From Macrostomum lignano (Eukaryota), in NCBI GenBank assembly GCA_002269645.1, contig NIVC01005249.1, positions 1 to 17,544 on the forward strand: DNA of 17,544 nucleotides. The letters are read 5' to 3'. The notes under the pieces were generated by a model that did no database searches, had not been told where the DNA came from, and was given only the letters and a program-made list of their open reading frames with translations. The translations under genes and the position numbers were made by a program. Shown one piece after another: positions 8,482 to 11,400 of the stretch; the first letter of the stretch is position 1; each line of letters begins with the position of its first letter.

Positions 8482-11400
8482 TTAGTCTGAGTCTGAGTCG
8501 ACCACGCGGTTCCGTTCGGCCTGCAGCCACTCGGAGTTCTCAAATAGTCGGGCGAAAATACGATTATTCGTGGCGCTGTCCTTGCCGAAGTACTGCACCT
8601 GAATCTTCTGTCTGACCCTCAGCTGCAGGCTCTTGGCGGTTTTGATCTGAAATAAACAAATAGAGATTAAGTCAACGGAGTAACTAACTGATTAACAAAA
8701 TAATTAACTAACTATCTAACTAACTAACTAACTAACTAACAAACTACTAACTAACTAACTAACTAACTAGCTAACGAACTACTACTAACTAACTATAACT
8801 AACTACTAACTAACTGACTAACTAACTAACTAACTAACTAACTAACTAACTAACTAACTAACTAACTAACTAACTAACTAACTAACTAACTAACTAACTA
8901 ACTAACTAACTAACTAACTAACTAACTAACTAACTAACTAACTAACTAACTAACTAACTAACTAACTAACTAACTAACTAACTAACTAACTAACTAACTA
9001 ACTAACTAACTAACTAACCAACTGACTAAATCACTCACTTTAGTTGGGTCCGAGTGCAGACTATTGTTGGCGATGAAGAAGACTTCCTGACGGCCTTCAA
9101 TTTTGACCCAGACGCCCTCCTTGGTGATCTTGATGATCTCGGCCTCGTAAGTTTTGCCATATTCCAGCTTGTTCCTGCTGCGCCGCCTGGCAAGCCACAG
9201 GACGACTTTCCTGTACACCCAGTGCAGGATGATGTACAGGAAGCCAAGGACGGACCCGATACCGACGGCGGCAAATAAGCCGGCAAAGTAGCTGAAGCTG
9301 AGCGGGATTTTGTCAGCCGGATTGATCACTGATGTCGGGCACCGGTTCAGGCCGAAGTACTTCTTCTCAAGATTCTGATACTCGGAATAGCGAACAGAGT
9401 TAAGAAACGACCTTACTTCGTTAGTGAACGGGTAGTTCTTGCGAATCATGGTGGTCTCGTACACCACCTCTTCAAGCGGCCCGTATGTCTTCAGTACGCA
9501 GTCTTTGGTCTTCTGATAGTTAATTGTTGTAGCAGAATCGATGTAAACATAGCGATCGTTGGATTTGAGTGTTTCGACAGCGGCTGCGGCTGACGGCTGT
9601 AGCATGTCTTCTGGCCAATTCGCTTTGGCTGTCTGCACCAGATTCGGCCAGCGTCTCTGCACGGTTGTGTAGGCGATTGAGTTGTTCCAAAATATGGCTC
9701 GATAAGATGTGGCATTTTGCAACTCGGTGATGGTTGTGAACGGAACCGACTCGTCCGGCTTAACTAAAAACGGCACCAAGTTGCTCACGTAGGTGGTCAT
9801 GTAGAATAGCGTGGAAAACCACAACAGCAGGGTGAATAAACGAGCTGACGGCTTGCGGGGCTCTGTCTCCACCTTGGACATCAGGAAGGAGCTCAGTACA
9901 AGGAAGAATGATGCCATGAAGCTGAACATTGGCTTGTCGCTTTTATTAGGACTGATCTTGTCGCTGACAAACAGCGTGACAGACAGTACAACCATGGAGA
10001 ACATGATGCTGATCCATACGTACCAGGAGAACGGATAGAATACATTGAAGAAGTCCAACGGATGAATCGTCCTCTTGAGTAGCATTAGCAGGCCAGACTG
10101 CACCAGATTGATTGACATATCCGCCGCCTGAAGTCGGTCCGACAGAGCAAACATGAAATTTGCCGACATGTCTGCCCTCTGAAATTTTACAAAGAGCGAT
10201 ACAATATGATTGAGAAATTCTAGCGATCGAGGGGTCTTTATTCAAAATATTCAAACTTTAAACTGCATGAGTACGAGCAGGCTTAATCGAACTGATGGGG
10301 CACTTACATTCTCGGTGAGGTATCCCATCATTCCAGTCCAGCTTCCGTCTGGCCTTTTCGAACCGTAGCTCCCATCTTCGGCAAGCAAAATCTCGAATTG
10401 AAAGCCGAGATTCCTCTGCATCAGCAGGATGAGATCGTAACTGATGCCGGTGAGTTCTCCGTTCAAGTTTTTGTATAGATAAGGCTGGTCCTAAAAGCAA
10501 ATATATAAATTCATTGTTGTACTTCTGCTCTAAGGGGCGTTCGTTTTCTAGCTATGTAGCTAGTGCCTATGAGCTATTGAAAGGCCACTTCCAATACACC
10601 AAACTGATTATTCAACTCTTCCAAGGCGCTTGGGATTCACAAAGGTGTTCACTCAGCGTCCTTAGCGACGCCTTCGACTGTTGTCCCCGACCGTCACCAA
10701 GGACGCAGGCTGGTTGCCATAGCGACAACTATACGCCTGATGTTGAGCCAGCATAAAAGCGCCGTGCTCTGTGTACCAGACAACATCGAAGTTAGTACTC
10801 GACTGTCTTCTGGCTGACGAAATCATCATAGACACGGCCTTTGGATTGCCAAAATATTGCTTGGGCATATTTTTTGCATACTTTTGCATACTTAGTAAAA
10901 CAGCTTTTTACTTTCGGTTCAGTAGCAAGGAAGAATACGTAAGCTTTATATATATTTATTTATAAAAATAAAGGCAGCTGAAATAGCTTTGATAAGTTTA
11001 GAAGCCCAAGCTTGCAGGCGTAAACAACTTGCTAATTGGTTCAGCAGTAATGTACATTAGCCAGTCCGCTGAAATGTACATGGCAGCTTTCGGCTGGAAT
11101 TCCGAGAAAGGCAATAAAAATCGGGACGGGTTGGGGGGATAGGGTGGAAAGGCGCAGTTGGGGGGTTTAAGCTGGGGGCGGGGGTAGCGCAAGCAACCGC
11201 GGTACTAAAGGGACCAAAATCCTATATACTAAAAATTTGTAAACTAGAAAAGAATTCTACTGTTTGTTCTATCGGGCTAAATGTCCTTTTAAGCTTACCA
11301 GAACACCAACAAATCGAATCAGAGAATTTTTAATCGTTGTGGTCTTAAAATAATCCACTTTGTAGGCGGGCGTAGCGTTCTGTATCCACGTGCCGGTCTT

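What the first reader, a model, noticed from the sequence alone, without database searches (positions are those of the whole stretch)
8482..10178. Ionotropic glutamate receptor fused to a PNPase-type S1 RNA-binding domain on its cytoplasmic tail
Seen in sequence: the 1140-nt exon 10178-9039 reads without stop or intron from the S1/S2 ligand-binding segments through M1-M4, a basic linker (RKVVLWLARRRSRNK) and into LEYGKTYEAEIIKITKEGVWVKIE...HSDPTK. A canonical phase-0 intron (GTGAGT...TTTCAG) joins it to IKTAKSLQLRVRQKIQVQYFGKD...DSDSD-stop. Because the fusion point lies inside one exon, it is not a gene-merging artefact. Established knowledge: the post-M4 tail of iGluRs is intracellular, normally disordered and often ends in a PDZ ligand, and the recovered motif pattern (LE[FY]G..Y.A.I..I...GV.VK, KIK...L.L.V.Q.IQV.YFG[RK]D) is that of the animal PNPT1 S1 domain as I recall it. 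Inference: a tetrameric ligand-gated channel presenting up to four S1 domains to the cytosol could anchor or sense RNA at the membrane, couple gating to local translation or RNA decay, or use S1 as a protein-interaction module. I know of no described iGluR-S1 fusion.
Basis: partly seen in the sequence, partly recalled or inferred. Interest (0 to 1): 0.93.

Follow-up and report, generated by a model that had tools for sequence, protein, structure and literature searches.

The report
Flatworm channel carrying an RNA-binding-type tail
This flatworm (Macrostomum lignano) gene encodes a glutamate-receptor-type ion channel subunit whose intracellular end is a folded S1 domain copied from the mitochondrial RNA-degrading enzyme PNPase; the same design recurs in at least ten flatworm species and I found no paper describing it.

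Summary
The minus-strand exon 10178-9039 runs without a stop from the ligand-binding lobe through M1-M4 and a basic linker into LEYGKTYEAEII.... A GT-AG phase-0 intron (9038-8647) joins it to the last exon, 8646-8482.

The roughly 95-residue tail is a genuine S1 OB-fold:
- AlphaFold2 gives pLDDT 87-90 and a five-stranded barrel.
- All 50 listed Foldseek hits against the PDB are S1-fold (OB) domains of RNA-binding proteins.
- It is specifically the metazoan PNPT1 type. The family profile scores E 5.5e-16 against human PNPase, against 6e-6 for any other S1 protein.

The fusion is not an artefact and not unique to this gene. The window comes from Macrostomum lignano. Nineteen 50%-identity cluster representatives carry the same layout of M4, a ~15-residue basic linker and an S1 domain. 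Every named one is a flatworm: Macrostomum, a monogenean, and eight cestodes including transcript-derived Schistocephalus proteins.

Function is untested. My best guess is a cytoplasmic docking module for RNA or RNP, held about 20 residues below the membrane. A protein-docking role is nearly as likely.

No paper in the searched library describes this architecture. I rate it a new variant of a known kind, of high interest.

The parts
8482..15276 (-). Whole iGluR-S1 gene: my 10-exon model, 873 aa. Exons are 15276-15186, 14172-14032, 13936-13688, 13352-13168, 12405-12352, 12110-11913, 11514-11299, 10490-10308, 10178-9039 and 8646-8482.
   Evidence: All junctions are GT-AG and in frame. The model is identical to public model P0001 apart from three exon-choice differences upstream. 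It scores 2.1e-30 against GluK5 over residues 320-763.
9039..10178 (-). Large exon 9. It encodes the end of ligand-binding lobe 1, M1 (10031-9966), pore loop M2 (9920-9858), M3 (9845-9762), lobe 2 (9761-9339), M4, the linker and the first half of the S1 domain.
   Evidence: 380 codons with no stop. Lig_chan PF00060 scores 1.6e-20.
9213..9296 (-). M4 transmembrane helix (FSYFAGLFAAVGIGSVLGFLYIILHWVY).
   Evidence: It aligns to M4 of GluK5. AlphaFold2 models it together with the linker as one continuous 40-residue helix at pLDDT above 90.
9168..9212 (-). Basic post-M4 linker RKVVLWLARRRSRNK (net charge +7).
   Evidence: The linker length (12-16 residues in the cut, ~15 typical) is conserved, and the net charge is +2 to +7 in 16 of 17 family members. 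It is modelled as a helical extension of M4 followed by an 8-residue connector.
9039..9167 (-). S1 domain, first half (LEYGKTYEAEIIKITKEGVWVKIEGRQEVFFIANNSLHSDPTK): strands beta1 to beta3.
   Evidence: It covers family-profile positions 2-52 at E 3.9e-19. Strands beta1-beta3 are predicted at pLDDT 94-97. It aligns to human PNPT1 from residue 628 of the 628-704 match.
8647..9038 (-). Phase-0 GT-AG intron that splits the S1 domain. It is mostly a (GTTA)n microsatellite.
   Evidence: The sequence is and the repeat at 8681-9029. A phase-0 intron lies within about 2 residues of the same position in Hymenolepis weldensis paralogs.
8545..8646 (-). S1 domain, second half (IKTAKSLQLRVRQKIQVQYFGKDSATNNRIFARL): the connecting segment and strands beta4 and beta5, with the PNPT1-type YFGKD motif.
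   Evidence: One search gives the translation. It covers family-profile positions 51-92 at E 1.3e-11. Strands E72-80 and E87-91 are in the model.
8482..8544 (-). C-terminal helix and acidic end (FENSEWLQAERNRVVDSDSD) plus the stop codon TAA (8484-8482).
   Evidence: One search gives the sequence. The helix is predicted at pLDDT 65-76. This segment is not conserved across the family.

Best explanation
What is shown (about 0.95 confidence):
- This is a real Macrostomum lignano gene for an iGluR-superfamily channel subunit.
- Its usual short or disordered cytoplasmic tail is replaced by a folded S1 OB-fold domain.
- That domain's closest relative outside the family is the S1 domain of the metazoan mitochondrial PNPase (PNPT1), and the layout is inherited by a whole family of flatworm iGluR-like genes; capture from PNPT1 in an early flatworm is the inference.

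Geometry, from models: M4 continues as a basic helix of about 12 residues. An 8-residue connector then leads into the five-stranded barrel. A tetrameric receptor would therefore hang four S1 barrels a few nanometres below the inner mouth of the channel.

Mechanism, inferred (about 0.4-0.45): the barrel uses the canonical OB-fold face on beta2, beta3 and beta5 to bind single-stranded RNA or an RNP. This face has gained aromatic and basic residues relative to PNPases. Binding would tether RNA to the receptor, or let cytosolic RNA or another polyanion influence receptor trafficking or gating.

The extracellular ligand is unknown and may not be glutamate.
For: Architecture in the window:
- The ORF is uninterrupted across M4, linker and S1.
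- The splice junction is the one used by the public model.
- The window contains no PNPase catalytic or KH sequence, and the downstream neighbour is an XDH/aldehyde oxidase gene.

Fold:
- AlphaFold2 on the tail gives pLDDT 86.8.
- M4 plus tail, modelled with a fusion-only alignment, gives 89.8.
- All 50 listed Foldseek hits are S1-fold (OB) domains of RNA-binding proteins. Human PNPase 9kjr_A matches at 37% identity and rmsd 2.9.

PNPT1 specificity:
- phmmer finds only PNPT1 in the PDB.
- The fusion-only profile scores 5.5e-16 against PNPT1, 6e-6 against bS1 and 6e-4 against bacterial PNPase.
- The next-best library hits after the fusion proteins are animal PNPases.

Conservation:
- 19 cluster representatives at 24-37% identity span M4, linker and S1.
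- The named ones come from 10 flatworm species.
- The Schistocephalus proteins are 949-950 aa and, judging from their UniProt entries (my inference), transcriptome-derived.
- An independent genomic contig, L002, has M4, linker and the whole S1 domain in one ORF.
- Two of the three tandem Lig_chan genes in Hymenolepis weldensis each carry a tail.
- The tail stays about 30% identical even where the channel cores have diverged to 38-57 bits.

RNA-face hints:
- The equivalent of E. coli PNPase F22 is W, Y or F in 12 of 17 tails, against M, M and L in the PNPases.
- Beta3 carries an aromatic pair.
- The D64 equivalent is kept in 12 of 17 tails.
- The R68 equivalent is K or R in 11 of 17.
- The core net charge is positive in 12 of 17.
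Against: - No RNA-binding assay exists for any member.
- Two of the five canonical S1 RNA-contact positions (the F19 and H34 equivalents) are not conserved. The residue numbering comes from my recollection of Bycroft et al. 1997 and of the 1SRO sequence.
- Core net charge ranges from -3 to +11, so an electrostatic RNA surface is not universal.
- The positive-inside rule alone explains the basic linker.
- The window's tail is below the Pfam S1 gathering score.
- Transcript evidence for this particular locus was not available here.
Confidence: 0.45

Rival explanations
1. The S1 barrel has been repurposed as a protein-protein module. It would serve for scaffold docking, trafficking or ER export, or cytoskeletal anchoring, taking over the job of the PDZ-ligand or disordered tails of other iGluRs. 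It would not bind RNA.
For: - The parental PNPT1 S1 domain docks the helicase Suv3. The D713Y mutation raises Kd 13-fold without changing RNA affinity (PMC11851098).
- The F19 and H34 equivalents are lost, and net charge is variable and sometimes negative.
- The conserved aromatic residues could equally form a hydrophobic protein interface.
Against: - Aromatic and basic residues were gained exactly on the canonical OB nucleic-acid face, relative to the PNPases.
- No partner is known.
- The S1 fold is overwhelmingly a nucleic-acid binder (all hits).
Confidence: 0.35
2. The four S1 barrels form an intrinsic cytoplasmic ring, or sit against the inner leaflet. In this reading they act as an assembly or gating element, or as a sensor of anionic lipids or small polyanions, rather than recruiting macromolecules.
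For: - The tether to M4 is short, of fixed length and partly helical.
- In PNPase, the S1 domains cap the pore of the ring and move between open and closed states (PMC11851098).
- Trp, Tyr, Phe and Lys/Arg enrichment is also typical of membrane-interface surfaces.
Against: S1 domains are not known lipid binders. PNPase is trimeric while iGluRs are tetrameric.
Confidence: 0.12
3. Artefact or decaying relic. The possibilities are an assembly misjoin, a gene-model merge with a neighbouring PNPase fragment, or a non-functional exon remnant read through by chance.
For: - The last intron is a long microsatellite, which is prone to assembly problems.
- The public model of this locus has errors upstream.
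- The window's tail is below the Pfam S1 threshold.
Against: - The fusion point lies inside a continuous ORF.
- The same M4-linker-S1 layout is found in 10 named flatworm species and in several paralogs per genome, with invariant Gly and Tyr positions and a confidently predicted fold.
- It is present in transcript-derived proteins and as a single ORF on an independent genomic contig.
- There is no PNPase gene in the window.
Confidence: 0.03

Closest known systems
Ionotropic glutamate receptors (AMPA, kainate, NMDA and delta subunits; Pfam Lig_chan PF00060)
   Same: Both have a bilobed ligand-binding domain interrupted by M1, a pore loop and M3, followed by M4. The window protein aligns to GluK5, GluA2 and GluN1 over residues ~303-765. 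The arginine that binds the agonist carboxylate is kept.
   Different: - The C-terminal tail is a folded S1 OB-domain rather than a disordered or PDZ-ligand tail.
- The SYTANLAAF motif is degenerate (TTYVSNLVPF).
- The pore-loop tip has Met at the Q/R-site equivalent and a Lys two residues later.
- The Thr and Glu agonist contacts are not kept (alignment), so the ligand is unknown.
S1 domain of metazoan mitochondrial PNPase (PNPT1)
   Same: It is the best sequence match by ten orders of magnitude over other S1 proteins. It shares the motifs LEFG..Y.A.I..I...G, N..L and V.YFG[KR]D. The fold matches at 37% identity and rmsd 2.9 A to 9kjr_A.
   Different: - There are no RNase PH or KH domains.
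- The domain is tethered to a membrane helix.
- Aromatic residues have been gained on beta2, beta3 and beta5, and a basic residue at the R68 equivalent.
- It is located in the cytosol rather than in mitochondria (inferred from iGluR topology).
Insect and protostome 'Ionotropic Receptors' (IRs; divergent chemosensory iGluR relatives)
   Same: Both are lineage-specific expansions of divergent iGluR-like subunits, with eroded glutamate-binding residues and tandem paralog clusters.
   Different: As far as I know, IRs have short cytoplasmic tails with no folded domain. Orthology to IRs was not tested here.
TRPM2 channel with its C-terminal NUDT9-H domain (analogy only, from my own knowledge)
   Same: An ion channel has captured, as a cytoplasmic C-terminal module, a domain homologous to a mitochondrial enzyme. 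It uses that domain as a ligand-binding regulatory module rather than as an enzyme.
   Different: The channel family, the captured fold and the ligand (ADP-ribose) are all different. There is no homology.

Membership tests
iGluR superfamily (Lig_chan) | Pfam PF00060 match above the gathering score | tested here: met
   73.8 bits against a cut-off of 30.8, E 1.6e-20.
iGluR superfamily (Lig_chan) | Ligand-binding lobes 1 and 2 flanking M1-M2-M3, then M4, collinear with solved receptors | tested here: met
   A single alignment to GluK5 covers query 320-763, at 2.1e-30. GluA2 and GluN1 align similarly.
iGluR superfamily (Lig_chan) | Glutamate-contacting triad (GluA2 R485, T480 and E705 equivalents) | tested here: not met
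   Only the Arg is kept. By the GluK5 alignment, the T480 equivalent is Phe and the E705 equivalent is Ser. The protein is therefore a member of the fold family, but glutamate gating is doubtful.
iGluR superfamily (Lig_chan) | SYTANLAAF gate motif in M3 | tested here: inconclusive
   The window has TTYVSNLVPF, which matches Y, N, L and F only.
S1 RNA-binding domain (PF00575, OB-fold) | Pfam match above the gathering score | tested here: not met
   The window's tail scores 19.1-19.4 bits against a cut-off of 22. Nine of 17 family tails match at E<=0.1, the best at 3.4e-5.
S1 RNA-binding domain (PF00575, OB-fold) | Five-stranded antiparallel beta-barrel with S1 topology | tested here: met
   AlphaFold2 predicts five strands at pLDDT 86.8 and 89.8. 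All 50 listed Foldseek hits are S1-fold (OB) domains of RNA-binding proteins, at probability 1.00.
S1 RNA-binding domain (PF00575, OB-fold) | Canonical RNA-contact residues (E. coli PNPase F19, F22, H34, D64, R68; numbering from memory) | tested here: inconclusive
   The F22 equivalent is aromatic in 12 of 17 tails, D64 is kept in 12 of 17, and R68 is K or R in 11 of 17. The F19 and H34 equivalents are not conserved.
S1 RNA-binding domain (PF00575, OB-fold) | Binds single-stranded RNA | not testable with these tools
   This needs EMSA, fluorescence polarization or CLIP.
PNPase (PNPT1) enzyme family | Two RNase PH domains plus a KH domain upstream of S1 | tested here: not met
   The protein has no such domains and the window encodes none. 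Only the S1 module is PNPT1-derived, so the protein is not a PNPase, despite the UniProt auto-name of the Schistocephalus members.
Flatworm iGluR-S1 fusion family (defined here) | M4 helix, then a 12-16-residue (typically ~15) mostly basic linker, then L-E-F-G...Y...G...F.xN..L...Y-F-G-[KN]-D...F at the C-terminus | tested here: met
   The window sequence aligns end to end with 16 other members. The six-frame profile hit is at 3.9e-19 and 1.3e-11.

The most novel reading that the evidence does not exclude
Flatworms possess a phylum-wide class of ligand-gated ion channels that bind RNA directly through four PNPase-derived S1 domains on their cytoplasmic face. This would couple a surface receptor physically to mRNA or RNP localisation or local translation, or make channel behaviour sensitive to cytosolic RNA. 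No such coupling is known for any iGluR.
Probability: 0.3. Interest if true: 0.92.

Novelty: new variant of a known kind. Interest (0 to 1): 0.74.

Why it matters
The cytoplasmic tails of iGluRs are the hub for trafficking and synaptic plasticity, and everywhere studied they are disordered peptides. Here, a folded nucleic-acid-binding-type domain sits in that position. It has been kept across deeply diverged flatworm lineages, and it is held more tightly than the channel core in cestodes. That implies a strong and unexplored function.

If the domain binds RNA, this would be the first direct physical link between a ligand-gated channel and RNA. If it docks proteins, it shows how an S1 domain from a mitochondrial enzyme was re-used as a receptor scaffold.

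The family is restricted, as far as the named hits show, to flatworms, including tapeworms and monogenean parasites. It is therefore a lineage-specific receptor class, and potentially of pharmacological interest as a target class.

Macrostomum lignano is transgenic-tractable (PMC7053086), so the question can be tested directly.

Tried and rejected
- **Word-indexed homology searches.** Searches with the tail and with the 434-aa C-terminal half found nothing. The exhaustive HMMER search of cluster representatives was needed. The third word-indexed search, using the alignment, returned only 7 short members.
- **Exact look-up of the public model P0001 in the contig collection.** This failed, so no second copy of the locus or neighbouring assembly could be compared.
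- **My first guess at the organism.** From the microsatellites and short introns I first guessed a dipteran 'IR' gene. The cluster names show the window is from Macrostomum lignano.
- **A mis-annotated end of an adjacent PNPase gene.** Rejected: the window contains no RNase PH or KH sequence, and the downstream gene is an XDH/aldehyde oxidase.
- **Independent, recent exon capture in this species only.** Rejected: the same junction layout is present in cestodes and a monogenean.
- **tRNA or SINE at about 15.8-16.0 kb.** ARAGORN found nothing.
- **Literature.** Four searches combining iGluR or ionotropic receptor with S1 domain, PNPase, OB-fold or flatworm terms, one on tapeworm ligand-gated channels, and one on the family's accession numbers, found no description. 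The library lacks most subscription-journal papers, so this is absence of evidence only.
- **Intron homology with PNPT1.** This could not be tested because no flatworm PNPase gene was obtainable.
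Full report
**1. Observation**

On the minus strand, 10178-9039 is a single open stretch of 380 codons. It begins in the first ligand-binding lobe (RADMSANFMFALSDR...). It then runs through M1, the pore loop, M3, the second lobe and M4 (FSYFAGLFAAVGIGSVLGFLYIILHWVY). 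It continues without a stop into RKVVLWLARRRSRNK-LEYGKTYEAEIIKITKEGVWVKIEGRQEVFFIANNSLHSDPTK.

A GTGAGT donor at 9038 and a tttcAG acceptor at 8648-8647 join this exon in phase 0 to 8646-8482. That last exon reads IKTAKSLQLRVRQKIQVQYFGKDSATNNRIFARLFENSEWLQAERNRVVDSDSD-stop. The 392-nt intron is almost entirely a (GTTA)n microsatellite.

I assembled a 10-exon, 873-aa model with GT-AG borders throughout.

**2. What the two halves are**

- Pfam gives Lig_chan at 1.6e-20.
- The full-length model aligns to GluK5 (2.1e-30), GluA2 and GluN1 from about residue 303-393 to 763-765. The alignment stops just after M4.
- The remaining ~110 residues hit nothing in the PDB except mammalian PNPT1 S1 domains, at E 1.7e-7.
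- Pfam S1 is found but below threshold for this member: 19.1-19.4 bits against 22.
- AlphaFold2 on the tail gives mean pLDDT 86.8, with five strands and core blocks at 92-97.
- Modelled with M4 included, and using an alignment that contains no PNPase at all, the mean is 89.8. M4 and the basic linker form one 40-residue helix, followed by an 8-residue connector and the barrel.
- All 50 listed Foldseek hits against the PDB are S1-fold (OB) domains of RNA-binding proteins: bS1, eIF2alpha, Tex, RNase II/R/E, Rpb7 and human PNPase 9kjr_A (37% identity, rmsd 2.9).

**3. Origin of the window and distribution of the architecture**

The two word-indexed searches failed. An exhaustive HMMER search of 1.84 billion cluster representatives with M4 plus tail returned 23 proteins.

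- The top hit, P0001, is 100% identical over the query. It is UniRef100_A0A1I8HFD1 from Macrostomum lignano. It uses the same last junction and stop, and differs from my model only in three upstream exon choices.
- Eighteen further representatives, at 24-37% identity, match across M4, linker and tail.
- Every named one is a flatworm. They are two more M. lignano paralogs, the monogenean Cichlidogyrus casuarinus (UniProt calls it 'S1 motif domain-containing'), and the cestodes Schistocephalus solidus, Spirometra (two species), Rodentolepis nana, Hymenolepis microstoma, H. weldensis, H. diminuta and Anoplocephala perfoliata.
- The Schistocephalus proteins are 949-950 aa. I take them to be transcriptome-derived, judging from their UniProt entries. 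UniProt auto-names them 'Polyribonucleotide nucleotidyltransferase 1'.
- The H. microstoma protein, CDS33345.1, is annotated 'glutamate receptor ionotropic kainate 1'.
- True PNPases (a nematode, a spider and an unnamed sequence) appear only below the fusion proteins.

Further genomic evidence:

- A genomic contig of unknown organism, L002, has M4, linker, the complete S1 domain and an acidic end in one uninterrupted ORF, preceded by AT-rich non-coding DNA.
- The H. weldensis locus L001 holds three tandem Lig_chan genes. Two of them have S1 tails, encoded there by small separate exons.
- One of those introns is probably GC-AG and phase 0. It lies within about two residues of the window's intron. 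This is compatible with a shared ancestral intron but does not prove it.

**4. The tail is specifically PNPT1-type**

A profile built only from the 17 fusion tails scores 5.5e-16 (61.5 bits) against human PNPase. The next best are ribosomal protein S1 at 6e-6 and bacterial PNPases at 6e-4.

The shared motifs are LEFG..Y.A.[IV]......G, F..N..L and V.YFG[KN]D...F. The window contains no RNase PH or KH coding sequence, and its downstream neighbour is an XDH/aldehyde-oxidase gene. Only the S1 module was captured.

Macrostomorpha and Neodermata both have the fusion. I take the capture to predate their split; the flatworm phylogeny here is from my own knowledge. The alternative of independent captures was not formally tested.

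**5. Constraint**

The channel cores of the cestode members score only 38-57 bits against the window's core. That is lower than vertebrate GluK5, at 108.6 bits. Yet the tails remain about 30% identical, with invariant Gly and near-invariant Tyr and Gly positions.

The linker length stays in a narrow range (12-16 residues in the cut, typically ~15). Its net charge is +2 to +7 in 16 of 17 members. This pattern is that of a functional, folded domain, not a relic.

**6. Mechanism**

*Shown or strongly supported:* a folded S1 barrel is tethered about 20 residues from the inner membrane face. The C-terminus of an iGluR is cytoplasmic (established topology), and the basic post-M4 helix fits the positive-inside rule.

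*Inferred:* what the barrel binds. Relative to PNPases, the fusion tails differ in four ways (residue numbering recalled from Bycroft et al. 1997 and 1SRO):

- They have an aromatic residue at the E. coli PNPase F22 equivalent in 12 of 17 cases, against M, M and L in the PNPases.
- They have an aromatic pair in beta3.
- They have Phe in beta5 in 15 of 17 cases.
- They have K or R at the R68 equivalent in 11 of 17 cases.

D64 is kept, but the F19 and H34 equivalents are not. Core charge is positive in 12 of 17 but ranges from -3 to +11.

The literature on the parent domain cuts both ways. [quoted passage not shown] Its mobility helps capture structured RNA, and a mutation within it (D713Y) leaves RNA affinity intact while weakening Suv3 binding 13-fold (PMC11851098).

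My ranking is:

| Reading | Probability |
|---|---|
| RNA/RNP docking | about 0.4-0.45 |
| Protein docking without RNA | about 0.35 |
| Intrinsic ring, lipid or gating element | about 0.12 |
| Artefact or relic | about 0.03 |

**7. Comparison with known families**

The protein is a member of the iGluR fold family, but several features set it apart (alignment):

- Only the Arg of the agonist-binding triad is kept.
- The gate motif is degenerate (TTYVSNLVPF).
- The pore-loop tip is unusual, with Met at the Q/R-site equivalent and a Lys two residues later.

It is not a PNPase. The tail is an S1 fold by structure prediction and by profile. By the strict Pfam cut-off the window's copy is sub-threshold.

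A functional analogy, from my own knowledge, is TRPM2. Its C-terminal NUDT9-H module is likewise homologous to a mitochondrial enzyme and acts as a regulatory ligand-binding domain.

**8. Novelty**

Six literature searches found no description of an iGluR or IR with an S1 or OB-fold tail, nor any mention of the family's accession numbers. The architecture is visible in public databases only as automatic names.

I classify it as a new variant of a known kind: an iGluR with an unprecedented folded, nucleic-acid-binding-type cytoplasmic domain, defining a family found so far only in flatworms.

**Limits**

- The taxonomic range outside the named flatworms is unknown. Several members come from unnamed Logan, ENA or MetaClust records.
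- No trematode or planarian member surfaced, but their absence was not tested.
- Transcript support for this exact locus was not checked.

Noticed in passing
window 2017-6774 (minus strand): The downstream neighbour is a multi-exon xanthine dehydrogenase/aldehyde oxidase-type gene. Pfam finds Fer2_2, FAD_binding_5, Ald_Xan_dh_C, MoCoBD_1 and MoCoBD_2.
   Followed up: partly
window 8681-9029, 11621-11901, 13412-13662, 14211-15159, 16295-16908: The introns and upstream region of the receptor gene are packed with tandem repeats:
- (GTTA)n, about 89 copies, in the intron that splits the S1 domain
- a 17-bp unit, 16 copies
- (TATC)n, about 63 copies
- an 18-bp unit, about 49 copies, filling intron 1
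- a 42-bp satellite upstream of the gene
   Followed up: no
window 10308-10490 and 11913-12110/11299-11514 (minus strand): The public protein model of this locus (P0001, UniRef100_A0A1I8HFD1, 783 aa) skips the 61-aa exon that carries the ligand-binding-lobe motif GSWTGMMGYL. It also skips 37 aa at the exon 6/7 border and adds 8 aa at the exon 1/2 border. My 873-aa model restores collinearity with solved iGluRs.
   Followed up: yes
window 9858-9920 and 9762-9845 (minus strand): The pore region is unusual:
- In SSFLMSKVETEP, the Q/R-site equivalent is Met and a Lys follows two residues later. M. lignano paralog P0002 shares the same SSFLMSK string, and most family members keep a Lys at that point.
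- The gate motif is TTYVSNLVPF instead of SYTANLAAF.

Ion selectivity and gating may therefore differ from classical iGluRs.
   Followed up: partly
L001 (Hymenolepis weldensis, JBQVRA010002054.1) 1-20648: Three Lig_chan genes lie in tandem. Two carry S1 tails, split into small exons, one apparently with a GC-AG phase-0 intron (AAT|GCAAGT...CAG|GAG). The annotated 244-aa model P0019 seems to skip the conserved segment VNASHIKITRN.
   Followed up: partly
P0016 (Rodentolepis nana, 1263 aa) and P0024 (M. lignano record, 974 aa): Some public models of family members are merges.
- P0016 contains two receptor units, each ending in an S1-like segment.
- P0024 continues past the tail into a GPCR-like sequence (NPVIY motif).

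These are gene-model artefacts layered on top of the real fusion.
   Followed up: no
P0007/P0027 (Schistocephalus solidus): UniProt automatically names these 949-950-aa iGluR-like proteins 'Polyribonucleotide nucleotidyltransferase 1', evidently because of the S1 tail. This is a propagating mis-annotation.
   Followed up: yes
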